From Ostrea edulis (taxonomy: Eukaryota), in assembly GCF_947568905.1 (NCBI RefSeq), contig NC_079166.1, forward strand, positions 6,014,001 to 6,078,000: 64,000 bases of DNA. Direction: 5' to 3'. Below are positions 4,469 through 60,756 of the stretch, piece after piece. Each line of letters opens with the position of its first letter. Within the stretch, counting starts at the first letter, position 1. The translations under genes were made by a program, and so were the position numbers. The notes beneath the pieces are model-generated. The model saw only the letters and a list, made by a program, of their open reading frames with translations, searched no databases and was not told where the DNA came from.

Positions 4469-5826
4469 TTGAACGTCGCGGTCCACAGCAACGGAATCTG
4501 TGACGTCTGTCTTCTGCGCCGTTGTGGTGAACACTAGCCATGCCGTTTATATAACCCGCCCCAGGACACTGGTAATGAACGGCGTGGTCATATCCGTTGA
4601 CATAACCTTAAACATTGATTTGATAGCAATGTCTTTTATCAAGAAGAAAGGCAGAATGACATGTTTATGATCACATATAGCTACTACAAAGAAAGCAATC
4701 CTTCATTTGTTTTTGGACTAAATTGTTGAAATGCATTGTAAAATCTGAAGATTTATTGTCGAGCATATATATTGCATTTTGTAAAATCTTATGTTCCCAT
4801 CCTCCTACAAATACTATTGATGAGTGGGTTTACTGTGCGTACATTTAAGGCCCTGACTCTGCTACAATGCCTACGTGTATTTACGATATCAATAGAACTT
4901 GTAAGGGGGGAATTCGCACTAGAGAAATTTGATATGGATGGAGGGTAGAGAATATGTACAATAATATTTTGAAATTAAAAACTATAAAAAATTTAAAACG
5001 AAAATGCAGTTTTAGTAGAAATTAATCTAAAAATTAGAAAATGAAAGGCCCTGCTGGATGATCTACAGATCAACAGTCGACACGTTCACCTACTGAGCTA
5101 CCCAATTAGATTTAACAGGAATATAAAAAAATATTGCTGATATTTATGTTTTCATTCAAGTTTTAAAAGGAAGTCAGCGTGGCCATATACATAAGGATTG
5201 TGGTACACAGTGATTTGATTGTGTTTTAGATTCATGGAGTTACTTTTGAGCTATCCTGTTCGTGTCTTGTGATTTGCGTATATTTGATGGTGTGGTTGTA
5301 TTTGTGTTATCCCCTATAGAGCTTTGATATTACAATGAGTGTGAGAGTTCAGTGAGTTCACTGGTCAGTTAATTGTTACTTTATCAAGAGGTGTTGCCAT
5401 TTAATCACAATTTAACTCATATCATTACTAGTTTTGTTTGTCATTTCCTATAATCAATAATGTAAATATCTATTGATGCAATTGTTTATTTCAGGGTTGC
5501 AATGCAATGCACGATTAACTGCAGAACCTCCAAAAGCCTTGTTTTTTTAATATCGCAACAATCAGAACCGTTACAGTATACACATCCCTAAATAAAGATT
5601 TACCTGTCCATTGACAACGAATATCCCTGCCTCGTCTACCGGTTTCACCACAGTGGAGTTCATATCGACGGTCTTCACGAGAATTGTCATGAAACGAAAC
5701 AACTGCATCGATATACTGAGAGGGGGACCTGCAGTGGAAATTGAGCGGCCCATCCCACTTGTTTTTCCAGCTGATTACCCCATGACAGTTCAGGAGAATG
5801 CATAAAGCAAACAGAATCTTTCCCAT
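4469..5826 (-). CDS. Dermatopontin/HAAF-like secreted protein, paralog 0 (partial: downstream exons are beyond the window start)
   Basis: Coding exon 5826-5604 (MGKILFALCILLNCHGVIS signal peptide, WKNKWDGPLNFHC...SFHDNSREDRRYELHC...CQWT; phase-1 GT donor). Coding exon 4606-4469 (GYVNGYDHAVHYQCPGAGYINGMASVHHNGAEDRRHRFRCCGPRRS; AG acceptor, GTGAGT donor). Intron phases match the plus-strand paralogs; no third-repeat exon found in 2971-4468. Confidence 0.9.
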
Positions 5827-10877: not shown

Positions 10878-12199
10878 ATGAGGGCCCTGACATTTGCACT
10901 TTTTACACTGATGTATATGGAAGCATCAGCTCAGTGGCAAAACGACTGGGACAGGCCGCTTAACTTCCAATGCTCTTCCAATAACGCCATTTCATACATT
11001 ACATCTGTGCATGACAACAGGAAGGAGGACAGACGATTTAACTTCCACTGTAGACCTGTTCACACAGGCTCTGGATCTGTTTCTTGCCACTTATCAGGTA
11101 TTTTACTTCACATTTTCAAGATAGTTTGATTAAAGTATACATTGTTATTCCCCCTTATATAACAGTTATGAGTTATGAGATTCATCATTGTTCGTTATCT
11201 TCGTCTTTCATGTAACTCCATACGAAAACAAAAGTCCAAGGTTTTGACTGCTGTTCCAGCGACTTGTTGAAATCGACTGTTGAACGACGTGACGTTATAT
11301 TGCGCTGAAACGAGTTATCCTTTATGTCGTTTGGTTAATAAATAATGTTGTTATACACTTTAATGTTTTTTCTATATAAACTAATACGATTTAGAACCAA
11401 CATTTTAACTGTTGAGTCCACTCTCACTCTCGTGGACTCTTGACCGGTCAACTATTGACCCGGTAATAATCTGTCCAATTTCTATTGGCTACGCAAGTCA
11501 CGTGATTCTTACTCTGTTGCGTTCTTTACTTACTTTGCGTAATGGCGAGGTTCACTAATTTCGATGATAATGCTATACAGAATGCATTAGATAGAAAGCA
11601 AACCAGTAATCTGAAAAATATAATTTTCAATTAGGATATAATGGGTAATGTTTTCTTTTAAACTAAAGTACATGGAGACAAACATACGCAACCACATTGT
11701 CCTGTTCAAAGTTCAAAATCAACAAACATGTGCATTGGGGAAAAAAAAACATAAAAGAAAGAAAGTGTATAACAAAACAGTTATAGACTGTCCTCGGACA
11801 ACAGCTGTTTTGTTTGACCCGAGGACGGATCTCTTGCCAGAAGCCGTAGGCTGAGGACAACAGATCCGTCCTCGGGTCAAACAAAACAGCTGTTGTCCTC
11901 GAACAAAGTTGATAACTGTATACCGATACATGACACTTTGGCATTGCAGCTGAAGAGGGAATTCAGGCAATCCTCGAAAGCAGAGACAGCGAAAATACAA
12001 AACATGTGAAAACAGCAGAAACACCCTTAACGATTATTTTTTTAATTGCTTCCTTTATGGATATAACAAAGAAGTTGTTGAAAGGAGTCTTCGACAACAG
12101 TTGATCTGTCGGCCTTGGCCAACAGTTTGCAAACCGGCCTGACAGATCAACTGTTGCCCTCAACCCCAGTCGACAACTCTGTACTGTTTTCATAAAAGC

Positions 12200-12248
<49 letters not shown>

Positions 12249-13552
12249 GGCAGGAACGATTGGTTTGTTTATTGGCGCGTGATGTACACGTTGATATAAA
12301 GAAATAATTCGTTTTTTTACAAACCTATTCATTGTTATATGAAATAATTTTAATAATTATATCCACAGGTTACGTGAACAATTATGATCAGCCAGTCCTT
12401 TATACGTGTCCAAATGGTGGTTATCTGAATGGTGTGTCTAGTATCCATAACAACAGGAAGGAAGACAGGCAGTATAGATTTAGATGCTGTGCTCCAAGTT
12501 CAGGTATGTATGACCACAAAACCTCGTGGTAGCGTAAATCATAATTGCATATAAAAACAAATAAGAGGTTAGACATTGGAAACTGTGTAAATGAAATATG
12601 TGATAATGATGGTGATAATACTAATGATAATACTGATAATAATAAAAATTACAATGAAACGATTTAAAGGCTATTACCATACGGACTGCACATGGACTGG
12701 TTGGGTTAACAACTGGGATGAATATTTTTCGTATTCCGTTCCTCGTAATTACGTCATCAGAGGAATCAACAGCATTCACAATAATAGGAAAGAGTGAGTA
12801 TATAGTATTTACACCCTGTGATTAAGATTGTACTGTCATCAGTGGGTATTCACCTTACTATCACCACTGGTAGGTAAACACCTGATAAACATTTACATTA
12901 ATATAAGTCGGTACACACGGTCTTGTATTACGATAATTAAGTTGACATTATACGTTGTCTGACATTATCATTACAAAGTAGGTATCATATGTATAATACG
13001 CGGTCCGACATCATTACAAAGTAGGTATTATACACGGTCTGACTTCACAATTAGTAAGTGCGGTTATTACATTCATATACAGTCTGACATTTTTTAAAGT
13101 TTATGATGTCTGATATTATCATTAGTGAGTGGACAGTAGCTACTGAAGAATGTTGAATTCGATATATGCAAGTAATTTAATATTCTGTTCATCATAAATA
13201 ATTTCCTCATCTGTTCCATTCGTCATGCTGTGTATAAACATGCACCGTGAGATAGATTGGCATTGTCCGTGAGTATACACTATGAGATGTATGCGTATAC
13301 TGTACTTATAAACAATATATGCTGTTATTATTCTTACAGAAGAATGCTCTTATTCATGTTTTGTTATTGAACATAATAATCAGTATTTGTTGTTGTATAA
13401 ATCATCAATAGGAATCTATTTACAATATATTGATATCGCATTACTTTTATTATCATTATGCTAGCATCTGTTTAGTGTACATTTACGATTACTTGTTTAT
13501 TGCCAGGGACAGAAGATTTCAATTTGAAATCTGCCGGATCACCTCACAATGA
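10878..13552 (+). CDS. Dermatopontin/HAAF-like secreted protein, paralog 1 (174 aa, intact)
   Basis: Exons 10878-11097, 12369-12503, 12670-12793, 13507-13552 join in frame with GT-AG introns. Signal peptide MRALTFALFTLMYMEASA; three W/YxNxW/YD...C...SxHxNRKEDRxF/Y...C repeats, the hallmark of the dermatopontin/HAAF family. Confidence 0.95.
11221..12194 (+). mobile_element. Crypton-like non-autonomous element in an intron of paralog 1 (shorter paralogous copy at about 35950-36362)
   Basis: Short inverted ends TACGAAAACA / TGTTTTCATA; decayed peptides AAEEGIQAILESRDSENTKHVKTAE and RRFNSASEEDIQAILKKRHSQK resemble the N-terminus of Crypton/DUF3504 tyrosine-recombinase proteins. Confidence 0.55.
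11797..11897. repeat. Perfect 36-bp inverted repeat with 29-nt spacer
   Basis: GACAACAGCTGTTTTGTTTGACCCGAGGACGGATCT (11797-11832) versus its exact reverse complement (11862-11897). Confidence 0.95.
12202..12242. repeat. (AT)n microsatellite
   Basis: Uninterrupted TA run; a similar run lies at 34692-34735 directly after a Naiad-like 3' end. Confidence 0.95.
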
Positions 13553-21650: not shown

Positions 21651-24200
21651 AGACACTGTATTTATATATTGTACATTGTAAACTGTCATCATAGACATCA
21701 TAATTATCTGTTGTACATTGTAAACTATCGTCATATACACTGTAATTATCTGTTGTATTTTGCAAACTATCGTCATATACACTGTAGTTATCTATTGTAC
21801 ATTGTAAACTATAGAAGTAGACACGGTAATTATCTGTTGTATTTTGTAAACTATAGACGTAGACACTGTAATTATCTATTGTACATTGTAAACTATAGAA
21901 GTAGACACGGTAATTATCTGTTGTATTTTGTAAACTATATACGTAGACACTGTAATTATCTATTGTACAGTGTAAACTATAGACGTAGACACTGTAATTA
22001 TCTATTGTACATTGTAAACTATAGACGTAGACACTGTAATTATCTATTGTACATTGTAAACTATCGACATAGACACTATAATTATCTATTGTACATTGTA
22101 AACTATAGACACAGACACTGTAATTATCTATTGTACAGTGTAAACTATAGACACAGACACTGTAATTATCTATTGTACAGTGTAAACTATAGACGTAGAC
22201 ACGGTAATTATCTATTGTACATTGTAAACTATCGACATAGACACTGTATTTATCTATTGTACATTGTAAACTATCGACATAGACACTGTAATTATCTATT
22301 GTACAGTGTAAACTATAGACATAGACACTGTAATTATCTGTTGTATTTTGTAAACTATATACGTAGACACTGTAATTATCTATTGTACAGTGTAAACTAT
22401 AGACGTAGACACGGTAATTATCTATTGTACAGTGTAAACTATAGACATAGACACTGTAATTATCTATTGTACAGTGTAAACTATCGACATAGACACTGTA
22501 ATTATCTATTGTACATTGTAAACTATAGACGTAGACACTGTAATTATCTATTGTACAGTGTAAACTATAGACATAGACACTGTAATTATCTGTTGTACAT
22601 TGTAAACTATCGACGTAGACACTGTAATTATCTGTTGTACAGTGTAAACTATAGACATAGACACTGTAATTATCTATTGTACAGTGTAAACTATCGACAT
22701 AGACACTGTAATTATCTATTGTACAGTGTAAACTATAGACATATACACTGTAATTATCTATTGTACAGTGTAAACTATAGACATAGACACTGTAATTATC
22801 TATTGTACATTGTAAACTATCGACGTAGACACTGTAATTATCTATTGTACAGTGTAAACTATCGACATAGACACTGTAATTATCTATTGTACAGTGTAAA
22901 CTATAGACATAGACACTGTAATTATCTATTGTACAGTGTAAACTATCGACATAGACACTGTAATTATCTATTGTACATTGTAAACTATCGACATAGACAC
23001 TATAATTATCTATTGTACAGTGTAAACTATAGACATAGACACTGTAATTATCTATTGTACAGTGTAAACTATAGACATAGACACTGTAATTATCTATTGT
23101 ACATTGTAAACTATCGACGTAGACACTGTAATTATCTATTGTACAGTGTAAACTATCGACATAGACACTGTAATTATCTATTGTACAGTGTAAACTATAG
23201 ACATAGACACTGTAATTATCTATTGTACATTGTAAACTATCGACATAGACACTGCAATTATCTATTGTACAGTGTAAACTATAGACATAGACACTGTAAT
23301 TATCTGTTGTATTTTGTAAACTATCGACATGTACACTGTATTTATCTATTGTACATTGTAAACTATCGACATAGACACTGTAATTATCTTTTGTACATTG
23401 TAAACTATCATCATAGACACGGTAATTATCTGTTGTATTTTGTAAACTATATACGTAGACACTGTAATTATCTATTGTACAGTGTAAACTATAGACGTAG
23501 ACACTGTAATTATCTATTGTACAGTGTAAACTATAGACATAGACACTATAATTATCTATTGTACATTGTAAACTATAGACGTAGACACTGTAATTATCTA
23601 TTGTACAGTGTAAACTATAGACATAGACACTGTAATTATCTATTGTACATTGTAAACTATAGACGTAGACACTGTAATTATCTATTGTACAGTGTAAACT
23701 ATAGACATAGACACTGTAATTATCTATTGTACATTGTAAACTATAGACGTAGACATTGTAATTATCTATTGTACATTGTAAACTATCGACATAGACACTG
23801 TAATTATCTATTGTACATTGTAAACTATCGTCATATACACTGTAATTATCTATTGTACATTGTAAACTATAGACGTAAACACTGTAATCATCTATTGTAC
23901 AGTGTAAACTATAGACGTAGACACTGTAATTATCTATTGTACAGTGTAAACTATAGACGTAAACACTGTAATCATCTATTGTACAGTGTAAACTATAGAC
24001 GTAAACACTGTAATCATCTATTGTACAGTGTAAACTATAGACGTAGACACTGTAATTATCTATTGTACATTGTAAACTATCGTCATATACACTGTAATTA
24101 TCTATTGTACATTGTAAACTATAGACGTAAACACTGTAATTATCTATTGTACATTGTAAACTATCGTCAATCACTGTAATTATATGTTGTATTTTGTAAA
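21651..24200. repeat. 42-bp minisatellite, about 60 copies
   Basis: Unit TGTAAACTATAGACATAGACACTGTAATTATCTATTGTACAG with substitution-only variants; it generates the 884-aa and 836-aa repeat ORFs. Confidence 0.97.
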
Positions 24201-24850
24201 CAATCATCAGGTACTTTTGGTCATTTGCGATTATTCAATATTTACAATTTTTCACGAGGTCATGAAAAATTGTAAATACTGAATAACCGTGTCCATAATA
24301 CTTCTCATTACCAGCTCGTTAGAGTTATCGCACTTTGATGACTCTTGTGCGTCATTGGTAAGAAAATGGACAAGTCTCGGGAGCAAGTGCAATATTACTG
24401 GGACATAAACAAAACGTTCATAGCAGCCTCCCCCTCCTCTTTAAGAGTTGAAATACATGTTGTATTTTTAAAGAACGTAACCATTGATCAAACTGCATTT
24501 TTCAAATATTCGAACACCATTTTATTAAAGATGGTACTTGTTTTTTAAAACTCCACCACACCTATTTTAAAAATTTCAAACAACGATGATCTCTGTCCCA
24601 AGTACATCAATATTTTATAATTTTCAAAATAGCTTCGATGCAGTTGGGAAACGCATTAGCTGTGTTAATTAGTGTTATAAACGTCTAAAAAATTCAGTTT
24701 GGCATATATATAACTTGTTCTAAATTATGGGAATTGAGGGGGGTGTACGTGTACGATTACCAAGTCCATGTCATATGAACCTGTCCTAATTGTATGATAA
24801 AATAGAATGTCTTCATAGTCTGACAGAATAACTTTAAAAACATATCAATC

Positions 24851-35656: not shown

Positions 35657-38600
35657 ATGAGGGCCCTGACATTGGCACTTTTTACTCTGATGTATATGGA
35701 AACATCAGCTCAGCGGCAAACCGACTGGGACAGGCCGCTTAACTTTCAATGCTCTTCCACTGCTAACGGCATCTCATATGTTATATCTGTGCATGACAAG
35801 AGAAAGAAGGAGAGACGATTTCTCTTCGTATGTAGACCTGTTCATGCAGTCTCTGGATCTGTTTCTTGCCACTTATCAGGTATTTTACTTCACATTCTCA
35901 ACATAGTTTGATTGGAAATTATACATTGTTATACCCCCTTATATAACAGTTCCTATGTAAAAGTCCAAGATTTTGACAGTTCCGGCGACTTGTGGACCAG
36001 AACTGTTAAGAGTCGACTGTTGACCGACGTGACATTATACTGCGCTGAAACGAGTTATCTTTCATGTCGTTTGGTAAATGAATAATGTCAATACACGACG
36101 CTTCAACAGTGCATCTGAAGAGGACATTCAGGCAATACTCAAGAAGAGACACAGCCAAAAACAAGAAAAATGTTGTAAAACAGCAGAAAACATCCGAAAC
36201 GATTATACTTTTAATTGTTTCCTATATGGGCACAACACAACAGATGTTGACAGGGTTCTCCGGCAACAGTGAATCTCTCAACCTTGGCCAATGGTTTGCA
36301 CATCGATCCGGCAGATCAACTGTTGTCCTCAACCCAAGTCAACAACTTGTACTATTTTCATACAACATATATATATACAAACACTTCTACATGAGAAGAA
36401 AAATACCTTGCTGTTGCCTTCAATTCGACATTTAGATATATCGACGACGTTTTATCTATTAACAATAATAACTTCCGTTCATATGTCGGTGCGATATATG
36501 TCTATGAGCCCAAAATAAAAGACAGCACCGAGTCGTCCACGTCTGCTTCATACTTGGATATTTTTTGAAAGTAGATATTAATGGCAAACTAGCAACTGAA
36601 CTTTATGACAAACGGGATGATTTCAACTTCTCCATCGTCAACGTCCCATATTTATGCAGCAATATTCCATTATCACCTACATATGATGCTTATATCTCTA
36701 AACAGATTCGATACGCATGAAGTTGTTCTGTGTTTGGTCAATGGTCAGTTTCTAAATTGAGGCAAGCTACCGAGAAACAAGTTGATGGTACTGGGGTTCA
36801 TCAGTCTCGCTTAAATAAGCATTTCGCAAATTCTATGGTCGTTATAACGATCTAGTTGGCCAATACAACCTATCATTGGGTGAAAGGTAAAATAGCGAAG
36901 AGTGATCAATCTCATAACTCCTATCAGCAATACAAAATAGATAGGTGAGCAAACACGGACCCCTGGATACACCAGAGTTGGAATCAGGTATCAAGGAGGA
37001 GTAAGTATCCCCTGTCGACCGGTCATACCCGCCGTGAGTCGTATATCTTGATTAGGTAAACGGAGTTATCCGCAGTCAAAATTTAATCCGGCGGGTTTGA
37101 CCGGTCGACAGGGGATGCTTACTCCTCCTAGGCACCTGATCCCACCTCTGGTGCATTCAGGGGTCCGTGTTTGCCCAACTATCTATTTTGAATTACTTAT
37201 AGGAGTTATGAGATTGATCACTGTCCGTTATCTTTACCTTTCATCTACACATTGATATGAAAAAATAATTCGTTTATTTACAAACCTATTGATTGTTATA
37301 TGAATTATTTTAAGTTTAATTTCCGTGGGGATCCGGGTAAGAATAGGTCTTCAGTACCCATGCGTGTCGTAATAAGCGACTAAATGGGGCGGTCGTTCGG
37401 ATGAGACCGCAAAAACCGAGGTCCCGTGTCACAGCAGGTGTGGCATGATCAAGATCCCTCCCTGCTCAATGGCCATAAGTACCGAGCATAGACCTTAATG
37501 TTGTAGCCCTTCAACGGCAGTGGTGACGTCTCCTTATTAATGACAAATTCTCGAGAGGGACGTAAAACAATATTCAATCAATTCAATTTTATGTTTGATA
37601 ATTATATCCACAGGTTACGTGAATAGTTATGATCAGCCATTCCTTTTTACGTGTCCAAATGGGGGTTATCTGAATAGTGTCTCTGATGTCCACAACAACA
37701 GCGAGAAAGACAGGCTGTATAGATTTAGATGTTGTACTCCGAGTTCAGGTATGCATGACCACAAAACCTCGTGGTAGCGTAAATCATAATTGCATACAAA
37801 GACAAGTTAGACATTGGAATATGTAAATGAAAATTTGATAATGATAATAATAGTGATTATAACAGTAATAATAAGAATTACAATGAAACAATTTAAAGGC
37901 TACTACCATACGGACTGCACATGGACTGGTTGGGTTAACAATTGGAGTGAATATTTTACGTACTTCACTCCTCGCAATTATATCATCAAAGGAGTCCACA
38001 GCATTCACAACAAGAGGAAAAAGTGAGTATATACTATTCACACCTTGTGTTTAACATTGTACAACACATACATGTACTGTCATCTGTGAGTATATACTAT
38101 AGGCACCCTGTGTTTAACATTGTACAACACATACATGTACTGTCATCTGTGAGTATATACTATTGGCACCCTGTGATTAACATTGTACAACACATACATG
38201 TACTGTCATCAGTGGGTATCTACTATTGACGCCCTGTGTTTAACATTGTACAACACATATATGTACTGTATTAAGTGAATATATACTATTGACACCCTGT
38301 GATTGACATTGTACAACACATTGTTAGCTGACCTGTTTTTATATTCATATGAAGCAGAATTTATTCAAAAACTTCTACGTGAGAAGAAAAAATATCTCGT
38401 TGTGACCTTCAATTCGACTTTTAGATATATCGATGACGTTTTGTCTATTAACAATGATAGCTTTCATTCATATGTCGATTTGATATATCCCTGTGAGCTC
38501 GAAATAAATGACACCACAGCGTCGTCCACTTCTGCTTCATACTTAGATATTTTATTGAAAGTAGGCATTAACGGCAAACTGACAACTCAACTGTATGACA

Positions 38601-41600
38601 AACGGGATGATTTCAGCTTCTCCATCTTCAACTTCCCACATTTATGTAGCAATATTCCATTATCACCTGCATATGGTGTTTATATATCTCAACTAATTCG
38701 ATATGCAAAAGCTTGTTCTGGGTATAGTCGGCTTCTAAATCGAGGTAAGTTACTGACAAACAAGTTGATGGTACAGGGATTTCAACAGTCTCGATTGAAG
38801 TCAGCATTTTGCAAATTCTATGGTCGTTATAACGATCTAGTTCATCAATACGACCTCGCATTGGGTCAAATGTTGTCTGACGTGTTTCATACCGATTGTT
38901 AAGCCGTTCTTGGCACACTGATTTTGACTGCGTATAACTCCGTTTACCTGATCAGGATATGGGGCTCACGGCGGGTGTGACCGGTCAACAGGGGATGCTC
39001 ACTCCTCCTAGGCACCTGATCCCACCTCTGGTGTGTCCAGGGGTCCATGTTTGCCCAACTATTTATTTTGTATTGCTTGTAGGAGTTATGAGATTGATCT
39101 CTGTTCGTTATCTTCACCTTGCATACATGTACTGTAATAAGTGGATATTCACTTTGCTATCACCACTGGTAGTTAAACACAGATACCTGATAATCAAATA
39201 CATTAATCTAAGTCAGTACACACGGTCTTGTATTACGATAACTAAGTTGACATGAAACTTTAAGCATTATACGCAGTCTGACATTATCATTGTGAAGTAG
39301 TTATTATAAGTGGTCTGTAGTTGTCATTATTAAGTGTGCAGTTATTACAAGCATATACAGTCTGACATTTGTTTTAATTTTATACAGTCTGATATTATCA
39401 TTAGTGAGTGGACATTAGTTACTGTAGAATGTTGAATTCGATATATGCTAGTAATTTAAGTTAATTCCCCATACCACATCTTAGTATCGATAAACCTACA
39501 GATTTCTATCAAAATTTGCATGTATTTTGTCGAGGATGTATATTGACCAAATTCCCGAAGAAAGATTTGTTTAGCGGCCTTTTCCAGAGTAAAGCCACTT
39601 CTAAAAATAGAACATATAACTTTAAAACAAGCAGTGTTAATATACATACATCTTAAGGCACTGTCTTTATTTAAACGATAGAAATATGTTTCTTTAATAT
39701 GAATTAATGAAAATGTATTGCATTTGACTGTTTCCAATAATTTTTCATCTACTGAACCATGTTCTTGGTTTCAAGGTGATGAAAATGCAGGTATAGTAGT
39801 CAAATTATGACTAATCATAGCCTACCATATCCGGAAAATAGTGTTTTCAAAAAACCTTCAGGCTTTTTAAACATTTCAATATGATTTACCTTTACACCCC
39901 AGCAATCATTTGACATAAGAAGTAGATAGGGTATCAGATAATTTGAGAGCCCAATGACCCCCTCTAGGTTAAAAACCTTTACAAAACGCATATTGAAAAA
40001 TGGTGTCTAAACTCCCTATCTCTGCAAACATGTTTCATTCATCATTTACATTACTAAATGACCATTTCAAGAAATATTACTGGGTGGGTTTTGAAAAACA
40101 GTTTAAAACATCAAAGCTTCAAATAGCTGAAAACCACTTTCATTGATTGGTGTAAGCTATGGAGATCGGGCTTGAAGTTAAAAAAATCCTAACTTTACTA
40201 TGGATCTTACTAAATCCTTAGCCTACGTCACATGTACACTGACATGACGTCACAATAAATGAAAAAATAAAATTATGTCGCCAAATCTAGTTGGAACAAA
40301 GTGATGTAGATCAGAATGATTTTTACATTTTTAACGCCCCTTAAGAGAATGATAACCTATGCTCAAATTACAAATTTTGGGAAATTTGAATATTTTAAAA
40401 GATGAACCCGAATTCTGCATTCCTCACCCACTTGGTAATGTTTAGTTCCTGCCACTTTTTAACAATACGATACAGCCATGTGATGTGAGTGTTAACAACA
40501 TGTAACTATCGCGTACATTCCGGGTCGTTTGAATCAAAACATCACTAAAGGTCATGTCCGGCCAGAAAAGTGTTTTAGATCAAAGAAAATTACATTACAA
40601 CACCCATACTGTACGTAGAAGAACACAAACGTACGACACCTAGGCCTAGATATAGGGCCTAGATATGTGACAAATCTGTCAGCGTGTGATCTAAATTGAA
40701 ATCATTAGACACAACAGAGATATGCACATACACTGTACATGTATATGTATATGCACATTTATTATGGATTCGGAGGGCCTCGAAAGCGATTATTGTCGTG
40801 TAAATAAATATTTTAAAAAAATCCGAGGGGGTTTACAATGTTAGCATAGCTTTATATTATTGATATATTTTATTTAGATCATGACAACATCGATCGTATT
40901 CTTTAAGGTTTAAATAAATTACAAGGAACACATAACAACAATATGTCACTGTCAGTACATGTAGCACATAAAAATCTGCATAGTGTACATGTTGAATAGG
41001 AGATTCTATATTTCTACCCATCATTAATGATCGGAAATCGCACAAAAGAAATCGCCTACAATCGATACATTGAAAATAGGCAACACGATTTAACATCATA
41101 GTCTGTAATATTTGCAGAAATCTCACGGGAATTACTGAACGATTGTGTGTCATAACACAATGTGTATGGAGAAGTTGCGACTTCGCGATGTACATGTATA
41201 TAACTATAAGCACTTTTTCCCCCAGAGCGCTGTCTTGTATAGAACCGGCTTATTTCTATTATTGCGATTCGTATGTTGTTTTTTAATTCTAAAGTTTTGT
41301 TGTTTGCTTTCACATAATCAGTCCTAATACGGTCTGCAAAATTCACCAAAATGCCATCGGGTTCGTTGAATGTGTGATAACGTTCGTGATTCGTGAATAA
41401 CGTTTCTAACGTTATTTGACGTGATCTGGGGAATTACCTTAAGATTCTGTTCACCATATATAATTTCCTCATCTGTTCCATTTGTCATGCTGTGTATAAA
41501 CATGCACCGTGAGATAGATTGGCATTGTCCGTGAGTATACATTACGAGATGTATGAATATACTGTATTTATAAACAATATATGCTGTTATTATTCTTACA

Positions 41601-41810
41601 GAAGAATGCTCTTATTCATGTTTTGTTAATGAGCACATAACAATCAGGACCTGTATAAATCATCAATATAAATATATTTAGAATATATTGATATCGCATT
41701 ACTCTTATCGTTATTATGCTATCATCTATTTAGTGTTTATTTACGATTACTTGTTTATTGCCAGGGACAGAAGATTTCAATTTGAAATCTGCCGGATCAC
41801 CCCACACTGA
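35657..41810 (+). CDS. Dermatopontin/HAAF-like protein, paralog 2 (175 aa, ORF intact but motifs diverged)
   Basis: Exons 35657-35879, 37614-37748, 37899-38022, 41765-41810 join in frame with GT-AG introns; cysteines retained; motifs read HDKRKKERRF, HNNSEKDRLY, HNKRKKDRRF. Confidence 0.9.
36362..37245. mobile_element. Naiad-like Penelope fragments in forward/inverted/forward arrangement in an intron of paralog 2
   Basis: Plus-strand RT fragment about 36362-36880, minus-strand 3' end about 36885-37080, plus-strand 3' end about 37087-37243; such tandem/inverted insertions are typical of Penelope-like elements. Confidence 0.8.
37322..37585 (+). mobile_element. 5'-truncated SINE inserted just upstream of a splice acceptor of paralog 2
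   Basis: GC-rich CCGTGGGGATCCGGG..GTCGTAATAAGCGACTAA..GAGGTCCCGTGTCACAGCAGG..GTGACGTCTCC body with a (CAAT)n tail; absent at the same site in paralog 1. Confidence 0.75.
38023..38322 (+). repeat. 63-bp tandem repeat (about 5 units) that begins at and duplicates a 5' splice site
   Basis: Units start with GTGAGT at 38023, 38086, 38149, GTGGGT at 38212 and GTGAAT at 38275. Confidence 0.92.
38323..39121 (+). mobile_element. Naiad-like Penelope retroelement, 5'-truncated; longest and best-preserved copy in the window
   Basis: Open RT segment LADLFLYSYE..FRYIDDVLSINN..YLDILL..LYDKRDDFSFSIFNFP..SNIPLSPAYGVYISQLIRYAKACS..TDC*, then the structured 3' end ending CTTCACCTTGCAT. Confidence 0.88.
39460..41438. 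mobile_element. Kolobok-like non-autonomous DNA transposon (1979 bp) in the last intron of paralog 2
   Basis: TTAA duplication (39456-39459, 41439-41442); TIR GTTAATTCCCCA / TGGGGAATTACC; empty site in paralog 1 near 13178. Confidence 0.8.
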
Positions 41811-42239
41811 AGGTTTGAATTTGGAATCAGCCAGATCATCACACACTGAAGAGGATGTTCTTGATTTATAGCATGTAGAATACTACAATAAATGATTAAA
41901 AAACGTGTAGACCAATGTTGTTTGTTTTCTGTAAGTCTTAGTATATATTTCTTTTTAAAGGCCATGTTAAACGTTGATTTAAAAATGTATTTATTGTATA
42001 AAGGCAGACATGTATGAACGGTTTGAACACAAGTTCTTTCAACTTACGGGGTTCGCCCCTTAAACGTTGTCTAAAGAGTTTGTGTTTTCTGGTTAGAATA
42101 CTTCACAAACATAATGAAATGATGTGTTGGGTCATAAATGTAATTTTCAAACAATGGATCAACGTTCCTACCTGTACTGCGCATAATTAAACTATTTTGT
42201 CAACGTAGTGTGTGCTTAATTTGATTGGTCTGAATGACA

Positions 42240-58211: not shown

Positions 58212-60756
58212 ATGAGGGCCTTGACACTTGCACTTTTTACACTGATGTGTGTGTACGTATCAGCTCAGTGGAAAAACAATTGGGACAGGCCGCTAAACTT
58301 TCAGTGCCCGTCCACAAATAGTGCTATCTCTCACGTCGTATCCATGCATAATAACAAAAAGGAGGACAGGCGATTTAATTTCAACTGTAGACCTGTTCAG
58401 GCAGTCTCTGGACCCATTTCTTGCAAATTATCAGGTATTTTACTTCAAATTTGCAACACGGTTACATTGATACATTATATATTACTTTCCATAAAACACT
58501 GAAGTAAGTAAGTGACAATAACGCCTTTTTATTCATGAATAAATGTACACTTTGTATGAAAAAAGAACTATTCATTTCAAAATATCTTCCTTGATGTATA
58601 GAATGAATTGTTTTAATCACATCTACAGGTTATGTGAATAGCTACGATCAGCCAGTCCTTTATACGTGTCCAAATGGGGGTTATCTGAATGGTGTCTCTA
58701 GTGTACACAACAACAAGAAGGAAGACAGAATGTTTAGATTTAGATGCTGTACTCCAAAACCAGGTAACCGTTAACGCACAAATCCAATACTACATAAATC
58801 ATAATTGTGTAAAAAGAGATAAAGAGGGAATCTACATAGAAAACTGTAGAAATACATGCAGATGATAATAATAATGATGATGATGATAATAATGAACAAC
58901 TATTTCAAGGCTATCACCACAAGAACTGCAAATGGACTGGTTGGGTTAACAACTGGGATGAAACTTTTTCATACTTTGTTCCTCGTAATTACGTCATCAG
59001 AGGAATCAACAGTATTCACAACAATAAGAAAGAGTGAGTATATACTGTTCACATTCTGTGATTGATATTTCATCTAACACATACATGTATTATCATCAGT
59101 GGGCATTGAGTGCCATTCAACTGATTCAATGCGCGACATTTTCTGCATATGATTTTTTTTTTAATCGAGACAGGCTACTGTCAACTAATTTGATCTCAAA
59201 TACTTTCCGGAGTTTTAACAATATCGTATCTCTAAAGTTAGCATATCACGAGTCATAAGGTTATAATAACATAATGATTGATTATATTATAACGATCGAA
59301 CGGTGAAAATAATGAATGGTAATCAATCGCATAACTTCTACAAGGATTTCAAAATTAAGAGTTGGGGAAATACGGACCTCTGAATATACCAGAGATGGGA
59401 TTTGGTGCCCAGGAGAAGTTAGCATACCTTGTGGACCGCTCATAATTGTCATGAACCCTATATCTTGATCAGGTATGCGGGGTAATCCGTAGAACTGCAT
59501 GACAATTGGTATGAAATACGTCAGACATTGTTTAACTTCAAAAAGTCAGAATATAAAACATCATGAAACCAAGCACACCTGGTGGACTCGTGGAAAAAAC
59601 GACACGAGGAATATTTTTTTAAAAGTCAAAAGTTTTGACTACTAGTAATTCCTACTGAAGATACTGATGTGCAAAATCTGTTTTTGGTGACGGCATGACA
59701 AAACCCGCCAACATTACCTAAAAGGGGCGTTAGCTGTCTTTTTGTTACCAAACATTCAATTCATTGAAAATTGATCTACATTATATATTTCAGTAATAAA
59801 ACCAGTGTTTAAATATTTCAAACACTTTATAACATCAAAGCAGGCACTTGAATGTGTAATTTTGGTGATTAAATGATTATTGTCTTATATTGATATATTT
59901 CATGACATTAAACGCGGTTATCTAACCTAGGTTTATTAAGTTTATCTTGTTTTGTTCAAATTAAATCTTTTTATTAGTCATTAAAATATATTCCTATATC
60001 ATTGAGATATTTTGAGGAAAAAAGTAGTTGTCATGACTTACAAAGCTAATAACCCTTTAAGGTATTCAATGTATAATGACCATATTTCATATCTAATAAA
60101 TGGATGGTGGAATATTTGTAATCATGGTATCATTTTGAAGGGTTCATTAAATAAAAATAATCCACCACAGGAATTTTAAAAAATGTGTTTACTGCTTGAT
60201 TTTTTTCACCTAGAATTTAACATTGAAGTATGTGGGAAAAGCATGTTTTATTACAATATTTTAAAAACAAATTATATTTTCATACTAATTTAGTGGTAGA
60301 AAGTTACATACACTTTCTTTTTATGAAAATTTGAAACAAAATTAATCATTGACAAAACACATTTTTAGAAAATTAGATCGTTCTTATTTTTACAAAGAGC
60401 ACACAACTCTTCCAAAAAGTCTTAAGTGCAAAAAGGTCAGCTTCTAACCATTTACCAGTCATGTGAATTTCATCTGCTTCACTTTCATCATTATTTAACA
60501 ATAAACTTTTATGTTGATATAAATCCTTCAAACTTGTTCATTATCCTTTCATTATACATGGAATACCTGAAGATATATTATTGATATAGCAACGTTGATA
60601 AAATACCATTCTAAATCGCAACATTTACAAATTATCATTGATATCGCAATAGTATTAGTATAATTACCCTAACCTGTGTTTAGTGTACATGTTTGATTTT
60701 ATTTTTTCAGGGACCGAAGATTTAAATTTGAAATCTGCCAGATCACCAACCATTGA
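58212..60756 (+). CDS. Dermatopontin/HAAF-like secreted protein, paralog 3 (175 aa, intact)
   Basis: Exons 58212-58434, 58629-58763, 58910-59033, 60711-60756 join in frame; HNNKKEDRRF / HNNKKEDRMF / HNNKKEDRRF motifs; TATTTAA-GCCGATGTT and non-coding exon at 56845-56937; AATAAA near 60794. Confidence 0.95.

What the first reader, a model, noticed from the sequence alone, without database searches (positions are those of the whole stretch)
35657..41810. HAAF paralog 2: parallel Glu-to-Lys charge reversal in all three internal repeats
Seen: paralogs 1 and 3 have HxN(R/K)KEDR in every repeat, and paralog 0 has EDRR in both visible repeats. Paralog 2 reads HDKRKKERR (codons 35798-35812), HNNSEKDRL (K at 37706-37708) and HNKRKKDRR (K split across 38021-38022/41765). 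The Glu is therefore Lys in all three repeats, on different exons, and the conserved Asn is Lys in two. The N-terminal halves are also hit (WQNDWD>RQTDWD, WVNNWD>WVNNWS). Cysteines, splice sites and reading frame are intact. By hand count, exon 37614-37748 differs from paralog 1 at 11 of 44 residues with 6 synonymous changes. Established: the S-x-H-x-N-x-x-E-D-R repeat is the conserved signature of invertebrate dermatopontins/HAAF. Inference: three independent hits at one homologous site suggest selection to retarget or disable the repeated binding sites, for example a decoy or an anionic-ligand/mineral binder, rather than random decay.
Basis: partly seen in the sequence, partly recalled or inferred. 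Interest (0 to 1): 0.72.

Follow-up and report, generated by a model that had tools for sequence, protein, structure and literature searches.

The report
Dermatopontin paralog with lysine-swapped hairpin tips
One young copy in a tandem cluster of mollusc dermatopontin (HAAF-like) genes is intact and at least partly transcribed, yet it has replaced the family's near-invariant glutamate with lysine at the tip of all three repeat hairpins, which looks like a change of binding surface rather than plain decay, though selection is not proven.

Summary
Paralog 2 has four GT-AG exons (35657-35879, 37614-37748, 37899-38022, 41765-41810) and encodes an intact 175-aa dermatopontin (Pfam PF14704). It reads HDKRKKERR, HNNSEKDRL and HNKRKKDRR where five sister paralogs all have E-D-R.

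In 150 family representatives, about 95% of some 440 repeats have Glu there. About 1% have Lys, and no protein has Lys more than once.

In an AlphaFold model of a homolog, N-x-x-E is the four-residue turn of each repeat's β-hairpin. Paralog 2 changed 7 of these 12 turn residues against 22 of 144 others (p=0.0016). Under neutral simulation, a triple identical replacement at any thrice-conserved repeat column has P≈0.001.

The gene is single-copy. Its frame, splice sites and 8 cysteines are kept, the lysines are the same in three or four other individuals, and an RNA-like run carries an exact exon-1 contig.

The codon tests do not show positive selection. Branch ω is 1.2 (CI 0.53-3.9) and the branch-site test gives 2Δ=2.07, not significant. 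Two derived changes are still polymorphic. Repeat 2 is a K-E to E-K swap. The net charge (+10) only returns to the level of the other paralogs (+11 to +13).

Verdict: a real, unusual variant of a known family. Functional retargeting is likely but unproven.

The parts
35657..35879 (+). Paralog 2 exon 1: signal peptide and repeat 1 (RQTDWD ... HDKRKKERR)
   Evidence: Translation. Pfam DERM E=3e-6. An exact 261-nt contig covers 35620-35880 at depth 821 in the RNA-like run X5, against about 19 in the intron.
37614..37748 (+). Paralog 2 exon 2: repeat 2 (YVNSYD ... HNNSEKDRL)
   Evidence: Pfam DERM E=5e-11. AG/GT splice sites.
37899..38022 (+). Paralog 2 exon 3: most of repeat 3 (WVNNWS ... HNKRK, plus 2 bases of K161)
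   Evidence: Pfam DERM E=5e-6.
41765..41810 (+). Paralog 2 exon 4: third base of K161, then DRRFQFEICRITPH and the stop codon
35798..35809 (+). Hairpin turn of repeat 1: ancestral N-R-K-E is now K-R-K-K (N48K, E51K). The next codon is D52E.
   Evidence: Ancestral reconstruction. Turn assignment from the homolog model.
37697..37708 (+). Hairpin turn of repeat 2: ancestral N-R-K-E is now N-S-E-K (R104S, K105E, E106K). With N102 this creates the N-N-S sequon at 37694-37702.
38012..38022 (+). Hairpin turn of repeat 3: ancestral N-R-K-E is now K-R-K-K (N158K, E161K, completed by base 41765). Position 38014 is polymorphic (G/T = Lys/Asn).
37940..37948 (+). New N-W-S sequon, made by D136S (GAT>AGT) at the near-invariant Asp of the W-x-N-x-W-D motif of repeat 3
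37676..37676 (+). Polymorphic site. The reference A gives Ser96. Runs X1, X3 and X4 all carry G, which gives the ancestral, family-invariant Gly.
   Evidence: table 3.
10878..13552 (+). Paralog 1, sister of paralog 2 (exons 10878-11097, 12369-12503, 12670-12793, 13507-13552). E-D-R in all repeats.
58212..60756 (+). Paralog 3 (exons 58212-58434, 58629-58763, 58910-59033, 60711-60756). E-D-R in all repeats.
4479..5826 (-). Paralog 0, exons 1 and 2. Exons 3 and 4 lie left of the window in L033.

Best explanation
Paralog 2 is a young, still functional member of a tandem dermatopontin (HAAF-like) cluster whose ligand-contacting surface is being rebuilt.

In this family each of the three repeats is a long β-hairpin. 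S-x-H ends the first strand, N-x-x-E is the tight turn, and D-R opens the second strand. After splitting from paralog 1 (about 0.07 synonymous changes per site on each branch), paralog 2 kept the scaffold: signal peptide, 8 cysteines, the His and Arg of the motif, splice sites and promoter-proximal DNA. It replaced 7 of the 12 turn residues, giving K-R-K-K, N-S-E-K and K-R-K-K. It also gained two N-glycosylation sequons on motif residues.

The likely result is that the three hairpin tips now present lysine clusters, and possibly glycans, where the family presents a conserved Asn/Glu pair. The ancestral contact would be lost and binding would shift towards acidic partners.

Shown: the changes, their independence, their clustering, intactness, fixation of the lysines in the sampled animals, and transcription of exon 1.

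Inferred: that the turns are binding sites, that selection drove the changes, and what the new partner is.
For: - **Gene model and family:**
- **Rarity of Lys:** Glu occupies about 95% of some 440 family repeats. Lys occupies about 1%, and never more than one repeat per protein.
- **Ancestral state:** all five other paralogs in this clade have Glu at all three sites.
- **Structure of the motif:** in the AlphaFold model of homolog P0059 (pLDDT 92.3), the motif is a hairpin with N-x-x-E as the turn.
- **Clustering in the turns:** 7 of 12 turn residues changed against 22 of 144 others (Fisher p=0.0016). The neutral-simulation probability of 7 or more turn changes is 0.0006-0.002.
- **Parallel change:** a triple identical replacement has P≈0.001 under neutrality.
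- **Conserved positions:** paralog 2 hit 9 of the 29 family positions that are ≥90% conserved. Paralog 1 hit none.
- **Equal ages, unequal protein change:** the two branches have equal synonymous counts (9 and 10) but 29 against 12 replacements (p=0.012).
- **Elevated ω:** ω on the paralog-2 branch is above background (1.21 against 0.30, 2Δ=10.2, p=0.0014).
- **Intactness:** noncoding divergence and the indel rate between paralogs 1 and 2, combined with the simulation, predict about 6 disabling events on a fully neutral branch. That gives P(intact) of about 0.002.
- **Other individuals:** DNA runs from other animals show no frameshift, no stop and the same lysines. X5 holds an exact exon-1 contig that ends at the donor site, about 40 times deeper than the intron.
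- **Copy number:** the gene is single-copy.
Against: - ω=1.2 cannot be told from 1 (2Δ=0.18; 95% interval about 0.53-3.9).
- The branch-site test is not significant (2Δ=2.07), and its null fits best with every site neutral on this branch.
- Six double-hit codons may inflate such tests.
- At the lower bound of ω, relaxation confined to the last third of the branch would leave P(intact) near 0.1.
- Two derived changes at invariant positions (G96S, N158K) are still segregating, and all three exon polymorphisms seen are replacements.
- X5 shows no contig over 37700-37951, so a full-length spliced mRNA is not demonstrated.
- Paralog 2's exon 1 is at about 5% of the depth of the contig it shares with paralog 1.
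- The turns are purine-only DNA tracts, so a local mutational bias cannot be excluded.
- No ortholog from another species could be found.
- The model is of a homolog, and no coordinates were available to check exposure or the geometry of the three tips.
Confidence: 0.5

Rival explanations
1. Relaxed constraint on a redundant duplicate. With paralogs 1, 3 and 4 covering the function, paralog 2 has been drifting with ω close to 1 and is on its way to becoming a pseudogene. The intact frame and the lysine pattern would then be luck, helped by a mutation-prone purine tract.
For: - ω is 1.2 and not different from 1, and the branch-site null in which all sites are neutral is not rejected.
- Hits fall on many invariant positions: W20R, N22T, D52E, G96S, S99D, D136S.
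- Replacement polymorphisms segregate at invariant positions.
- Pfam scores are the lowest of the cluster for every exon.
- Apparent expression is low relative to paralog 1, and coverage of exons 2-3 in X5 has a hole.
- A more distant copy (L023) with Lys at this position does carry a stop codon.
Against: - Uniform neutrality predicts no clustering, yet 7 of 12 turn residues changed (p=0.0016; simulation 0.0006-0.002).
- Three identical Glu>Lys changes have P of about 5e-5 to 1e-3.
- About 6 disabling events are expected on a fully neutral branch and none is seen. All 8 cysteines, the three His and the three Arg are kept.
- The lysines are the same in all sampled individuals.
Confidence: 0.3
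2. Selection on overall charge, not on the site. The paralog-1/2 ancestor had dropped to a net charge of about +3, while the rest of the cluster sits at +11 to +13. Paralog 2 was pushed back to +10. Glu>Lys transitions at exposed, tolerant turn positions are simply the cheapest +2 steps, so the parallel hits reflect mutational accessibility and the basic function is unchanged.
For: - Net charges of the mature proteins are p0 +11, p5 +13, p3 and p4 +12, ancestor +3, p1 +4 and p2 +10.
- The ancestor had only 5 Glu in the mature protein. The three in the turns changed, and the two in strands (E137, E168) did not.
- A net gain of +7 or more has P=0.03-0.045 under neutrality.
Against: - The Glu is about 95% conserved across the family, whatever the protein's net charge. 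The equally basic paralogs 0, 3, 4 and 5 all keep it.
- Repeat 2 gained no charge. It swapped K-E to E-K and lost an Arg, which points to the position itself.
- The model does not explain the losses of the invariant Asn, Asp and Gly or the two new sequons.
Confidence: 0.15
3. Artefact: assembly or sequencing error, a mis-joined gene model, or conversion from an unseen copy.
For: None found.
Against: - Independent DNA runs from two studies reproduce every exon base at the three sites.
- The exon structure, phases and lengths match paralogs 1, 3, 4 and 5 exactly.
- The genome holds no second K-type copy.
Confidence: 0.02

Closest known systems
Invertebrate dermatopontins, including the Limulus 18-kDa hemagglutinin/amebocyte aggregation factor (Fujii et al. 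1992, as cited in PMC7747718); Pfam PF14704
   Same: It is a secreted protein of about 156 mature residues. It has three internal repeats, each with W-x-N-x-W-D ... S-x-H-x-N-x-x-E-D-R-x-(W/F)-x-F-x-C. The cysteine pattern is the same, and every coding exon matches PF14704.
   Different: The Glu of E-D-R is Lys in all three repeats. The Asn is Lys in two. The invariant Asp of W-D is Ser in repeat 3, and the first Trp is Arg in repeat 1. None of 150 family representatives has Lys in more than one repeat. Agglutinating activity was not tested.
Molluscan shell-matrix dermatopontin (the N-glycosylated 19.6-kDa protein of Biomphalaria glabrata, Marxen et al. 2003; independent recruitment to the shell in two snail lineages, Sarashina et al. 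2006; both as cited in PMC7747718)
   Same: It is a dermatopontin paralog that diverged after duplication within molluscs. Paralog 2 is the only copy in this cluster with N-glycosylation sequons (N102-N-S and N134-W-S).
   Different: There is no evidence that paralog 2 is in the shell. I could not compare the position of its sequons with those of the snail proteins. The snail shell proteins are not known to me to have lost the E-D-R glutamate (from memory, not tested).
[quoted passage not shown]
   Same: Same Pfam family and the same three-repeat disulfide-rich architecture, with D-R-(E/Q)-W after each hairpin.
   Different: Vertebrate DPT is acidic overall, whereas this cluster is basic (pI 8.6-9.6). 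As far as I recall, the Glu before D-R is not conserved in vertebrates, so the invertebrate N-x-x-E turn may serve a lineage-specific contact. This point is from memory and was not tested here.

Membership tests
Dermatopontin (Pfam PF14704, DERM) | Significant match to the family profile | tested here: met
Exon by exon, the scores are 28.0, 43.5 and 27.2 bits (E 3e-6, 5e-11, 5e-6), covering profile positions 2-47, 55-95 and 100-137 of 152. Exons 1 and 3 fall just under the 28.3-bit whole-protein cut-off when taken alone; the three together are well above it.
Dermatopontin (Pfam PF14704, DERM) | Three internal repeats with the conserved cysteine framework | tested here: met
   Three repeats align with those of paralogs 0, 1, 3, 4 and 5 and with 35 full-length family members. 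All 8 cysteines of the mature protein are kept.
Dermatopontin (Pfam PF14704, DERM) | Invertebrate repeat signature S-x-H-x-N-x-x-E-D-R | tested here: not met
   S, H and R are kept in all three repeats, except that S99 is Asp. The Glu is Lys in 3 of 3, the Asn is Lys in 2 of 3, and the Asp is Glu in 1 of 3. The protein is a member by homology and architecture but departs from the signature.
Dermatopontin (Pfam PF14704, DERM) | Secreted: N-terminal signal peptide | tested here: inconclusive
   The first 19 residues are hydrophobic and nearly identical to those of paralogs 1 and 3. No signal-peptide predictor was available.
Hemagglutinin/amebocyte aggregation factor (functional class) | Agglutinates erythrocytes or aggregates haemocytes | not testable with these tools
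   Requires recombinant protein and cell assays.
Shell-matrix dermatopontin (functional class) | Present in the shell organic matrix, expressed in mantle, N-glycosylated | not testable with these tools
   Only the presence of two sequons could be shown. No tissue-resolved RNA or shell proteome could be reached.
Processed or unprocessed pseudogene | Frameshift, premature stop, lost splice site or lost start | tested here: not met
   None is present in the reference or in the contigs of runs X1, X3, X4 and X5.

The most novel reading that the evidence does not exclude
The three N-x-x-E hairpin tips of invertebrate dermatopontins lie together at one end of a pseudo-threefold β-structure and form one composite recognition face, possibly cation-assisted. 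On this reading paralog 2 is a natural charge-inverted version of that face. It would either bind polyanionic targets (microbial surface polymers, sulfated glycans, acidic shell-matrix proteins or carbonate faces) or act as a non-binding competitor of the highly expressed paralog 1. The three lysines would then be one adaptive event on one site, not three.
Probability: 0.2. Interest if true: 0.6.

Novelty: new variant of a known kind. Interest (0 to 1): 0.42.

Why it matters
Dermatopontins are found from sponges to humans, and they recur in mollusc immune-challenge transcriptomes and shell proteomes (PMC4133350, PMC7747718, PMC3374290). Even so, no structure has been solved, and nobody knows what the near-invariant S-x-H-x-N-x-x-E-D-R signature does.

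This cluster offers a natural experiment. Two sister proteins about 80% identical sit 25 kb apart. One carries the canonical turns and the other has all three turns rewritten on an otherwise preserved scaffold. Comparing the two in binding, agglutination and mineralisation assays would directly test whether the hairpin tips are the functional site of the family.

If paralog 2 proves to be drifting instead, it is an ordinary case of a duplicate in early decay.

Tried and rejected
- **Orthologs.** The representative-library search with exon 1 found only relatives of 51% identity or less. The 90%-cluster search found nothing. A cross-species test was therefore impossible.
- **Gene conversion.** This was rejected for two reasons. 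No other K-type copy exists. The codons between the two changes also remain different in repeats 1 and 3.
- **Assembly error.** Rejected by the independent DNA runs.
- **Fold assignment.** Foldseek found no PDB match at E≤0.001. VIA-align's best hits were Vip3 toxins at Z 7.2 and 6.7, within the range the tool describes as common arrangement. Jacalin-type lectins and the PCSK9 C-terminal domain scored only Z 2-3. No fold is claimed beyond 'three β-hairpin repeats'.
- **Solved structures.** None exists for the family.
- **Reads.** I set the likeness threshold to 90%. This let paralog-1 and paralog-3 transcripts lie on paralog 2's exons, so depths over exon 2 cannot be assigned.
- I re-ran it from the stored file.
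- **Literature.** A search for the mapped adhesion peptide of mammalian DPT found nothing in the library, so that point is not used.
- **Joined protein.** It was built only inside scripts from window.fa. The structure model is of homolog P0059.
Full report
**Where this is.** The window is G000:C3:6014001-6078000 of an 895-Mb animal genome that looks molluscan. It holds four dermatopontin genes.
- Paralog 0 is on the minus strand (exons 5826-5602 and 4607-4479). Its last two exons lie just left of the window in L033.
- Paralog 1 has exons 10878-11097, 12369-12503, 12670-12793 and 13507-13552.
- Paralog 2 has exons 35657-35879, 37614-37748, 37899-38022 and 41765-41810.
- Paralog 3 has exons 58212-58434, 58629-58763, 58910-59033 and 60711-60756.
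- A fifth copy (p4, L031) sits 5 kb right of the window and is nearly identical to paralog 3. A sixth (p5, L032) lies 166 kb further on.
- More distant clusters lie on C2 and C6.

All copies share the same four-exon structure, intron phases and exon lengths. Every coding exon matches Pfam PF14704, and paralog 2 gives the lowest score for each exon.

Paralog 2 encodes an uninterrupted 175-aa protein with GT-AG introns. Its three motifs read HDKRKKERR, HNNSEKDRL and HNKRKKDRR. Paralogs 0, 1, 3, 4 and 5 all have H-x-N-x-x-E-D-R at these places.

Two corrections are needed. Repeat 2 is an adjacent swap, K-E to E-K (AAG GAA to GAG AAA), with an extra R>S, so it is not a net charge reversal. The mature protein has 8 cysteines, and all are kept.

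**How unusual it is.** I searched exon 1 against 1.84 billion representative proteins, which returned 159 family members, and examined the best 150. In about 440 repeats of those proteins the position before D-R is Glu in about 95% and Lys in about 1%. The four Lys cases are in four different proteins. In a 35-protein full-length alignment, the Glu is invariant or nearly so in each repeat, as are the Asn, Asp, Arg, His and Ser of the motif. Paralog 2 is single-copy, and no other copy in this genome has the K-type motif. The only other Lys is in one repeat of a distant copy that carries a stop codon (L023).

**Where the residues sit.** No dermatopontin structure has been solved. An AlphaFold model of homolog P0059, built on that alignment, is confident (pLDDT 92.3, pTM 0.84). 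In it each repeat is a short strand followed by a long β-hairpin. S-x-H-x closes the first long strand, N-x-x-E is the four-residue turn, and D-R opens the return strand. Paralog 2 has therefore rewritten the three homologous hairpin tips from N-R-K-E to K-R-K-K, N-S-E-K and K-R-K-K. Fold searches gave no trustworthy relative: Vip3 toxin domains at Z 7.2, and the PCSK9 C-terminal domain and jacalin-type lectins at Z 2-3. I could not obtain coordinates, so I do not know whether the three tips lie together.

**Evolutionary tests.** The tree is (p0,(p5,(p3,p4)),(p1,p2)). Reconstruction of the p1/p2 ancestor gives 10 synonymous and 12 replacement codon changes on the paralog-1 branch. The paralog-2 branch has 9 synonymous and 29 replacement changes, six of them double hits. 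The two copies are therefore equally old, but paralog 2 changed its protein 2.4 times faster (p=0.012).

- One ratio: ω=0.38, lnL -1702.89.
- Paralog 2 as foreground: ω=1.21 against 0.30, lnL -1697.79. The gain is 2Δ=10.2, p=0.0014.
- ω fixed at 1 on paralog 2: lnL -1697.88, not worse.
- The profile interval for ω on paralog 2 is about 0.53-3.9.
- Branch-site model A puts 35% of sites at ω=5.4, including all the turn changes. It beats its null by only 2Δ=2.07, and the null fits best with all sites neutral on this branch.
- With paralog 1 as foreground there is nothing.

The codon tests therefore show a strong change of regime, but they cannot separate positive selection from complete relaxation.

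**Evidence against plain decay.**
1. *Clustering.* 7 of the 12 turn residues changed, against 22 of 144 other mature residues (Fisher p=0.0016; p=0.007 if the two polymorphic sites are left out). In neutral simulations from the ancestor, the probability of 7 or more turn changes is 0.0006-0.002.
2. *Parallelism.* The simulated probability of Glu>Lys at all three sites is about 5e-5. For any identical triple replacement at any of the 11 columns identical in all three ancestral repeats, it is about 0.001. The changes are independent: the intervening codons still differ between repeats 1 and 3.
3. *Intactness.* Aligned introns and flanks of paralogs 1 and 2 differ at about 12% of sites and have 48 gap openings in 2,728 nt. 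That predicts about 4.6 indels in a 528-nt neutral sequence on one branch. Add about 1.5 nonsense changes, 0.2 start-codon hits and about 0.9 splice-site hits. Roughly 6 disabling events are then expected and none is seen, so P is about 0.002. If only the last third of the branch were neutral (the lower bound of ω), P would be about 0.1. This argument is therefore suggestive, not decisive.
4. *Conserved positions.* Paralog 2 hit 9 of the 29 family positions that are ≥90% conserved, and paralog 1 hit none. Meanwhile all Cys, the three His and the three Arg survive.

**Reads.** One call was allowed.
- In DNA-like runs X1, X3 and X4 (two studies), the contigs cover the exons with no indel and no stop. 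No run shows a difference at any of the three Lys sites. Exon 1 is covered in all three runs, the repeat-2 site in all three, and the repeat-3 site in X3 and X4 only.
- They show three exon polymorphisms, all replacements. 37676 A>G gives Ser96>Gly, the ancestral and family-invariant state, in all three runs. 38014 G>T gives Lys158>Asn, the ancestral state, in X4. 37628 T>C gives Tyr80>His in X4.
- Part of the remodelling is therefore recent and still segregating. That fits either ongoing adaptation or weak constraint.
- Run X5 behaves like RNA. An exact 261-nt contig covers 35620-35880 at depth 821 and stops at the exon-1 donor, while the intron has a depth of about 19.
- A much deeper contig (about 16,000) shares the last bases of exon 1 and runs on into paralog 1's exon 2. 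Paralog 1 is therefore expressed far more strongly.
- X5 has no contig over 37700-37951, so I cannot show a full-length spliced paralog-2 mRNA.
- My threshold of 90% likeness also let other paralogs' transcripts lie on exon 2.

**Charge and glycosylation.** The net charge of the mature proteins is +11 (p0), +13 (p5), +12 (p3 and p4), +3 (reconstructed p1/p2 ancestor), +4 (p1) and +10 (p2). Paralog 2 has thus returned to the cluster's usual strongly basic state by new routes. A gain of +7 or more has P=0.03-0.045 under neutrality. This supports a rival reading in which overall charge, not the site, was selected.

Three facts count against that rival. The equally basic paralogs all keep Glu. Repeat 2 gained no charge. 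The other losses at invariant residues are left unexplained.

Paralog 2 is also the only copy with N-glycosylation sequons. N102-N-S was created by R104S inside the turn of repeat 2. N134-W-S was created by the two-base change D136S in the W-x-N-x-W-D motif of repeat 3. The probability of two or more new sequons by chance is 0.07-0.09.

**Reading.** My best reading is that this is a functional, rapidly diverging duplicate whose three hairpin tips have been converted from the family's Asn/Glu turn to lysine-rich turns, changing what the protein binds (confidence about 0.5). Drift under relaxed constraint comes next (about 0.3), then selection on bulk charge (about 0.15).

**Comparison with what is known.** Dermatopontins are ancient extracellular proteins. 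The Limulus member is a hemagglutinin and amebocyte aggregation factor. The snail Biomphalaria uses an N-glycosylated one as its main soluble shell-matrix protein, and recruitment to the shell happened twice independently in gastropods (all as cited in PMC7747718). Oyster transcripts annotated as dermatopontin respond strongly to bacterial challenge (PMC4133350). Mammalian DPT organises collagen and fibronectin fibrils and promotes adhesion (PMC7230369).

Paralog 2 is a member of this family by homology and architecture, but it fails the family's own signature at the Glu in all three repeats. I found no description of such a variant. The library searched is limited, and the key 2006 paper on molluscan dermatopontin evolution was not readable here.

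**Limits.** The joined paralog-2 protein was used only inside scripts that read window.fa. The codon-model code is my own, not PAML.

Noticed in passing
window 38022-38321: The start of intron 3 of paralog 2 is a tandem array of 4.8 copies of a 63-nt unit, 90% alike. Each unit begins with the exon-3 donor sequence (A)GTGAGTATATAC, so the donor site is repeated several times. Paralog 1 has a single copy of the unit.
   Followed up: partly
window 41770-41852: The last 39 nt of the paralog-2 coding sequence, including the stop codon, are duplicated in tandem just after the stop (2.1 copies, 81% alike). The second copy reads RFEFGISQIITH* and lies in the 3' UTR. Paralog 1 lacks it.
   Followed up: partly
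window 36889-37234: Intron 1 of paralog 2 carries a 146-nt inverted repeat (88% complementary, 54-nt spacer) inside a stretch of about 1.2 kb (36356-37615). That stretch is present at enormous copy number in all DNA runs, with summed contig depth in the millions against about 100 for the flanks. It is probably a MITE-like element nested in other repeats.
   Followed up: partly
window 21651-24201: A 42-bp minisatellite, 61 copies at 91% identity. It produces long open frames on both strands (884 and 836 aa), which are artefacts of the repeat.
   Followed up: yes
L031 133-2896 (G000:C3:6083032-6085795): A further intact dermatopontin gene (p4) lies just right of the window. It is nearly identical to paralog 3, so it is a very recent tandem duplication.
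   Followed up: partly
window 10878-11097 and run X5: Paralog 1 appears very highly expressed in the RNA-like run X5. The contig sharing the end of exon 1 has a depth of about 16,000 and runs across the exon 1/2 junction into paralog 1's exon 2. Paralog 1 is also the least basic member of the cluster (net +4 against +10 to +13).
   Followed up: partly
L023 1507-1641; L005/L024; L010; L021: More distant dermatopontin copies in the same genome have lost the Glu in single repeats. L023 has YKDRR and carries a stop codon. The C6 clusters have SHNDRKF and YHHDRKF, where the His is also lost. L021 has VHNDRR. The Glu is therefore not inviolable in this genome, but no other copy has lost it in all repeats.
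   Followed up: no
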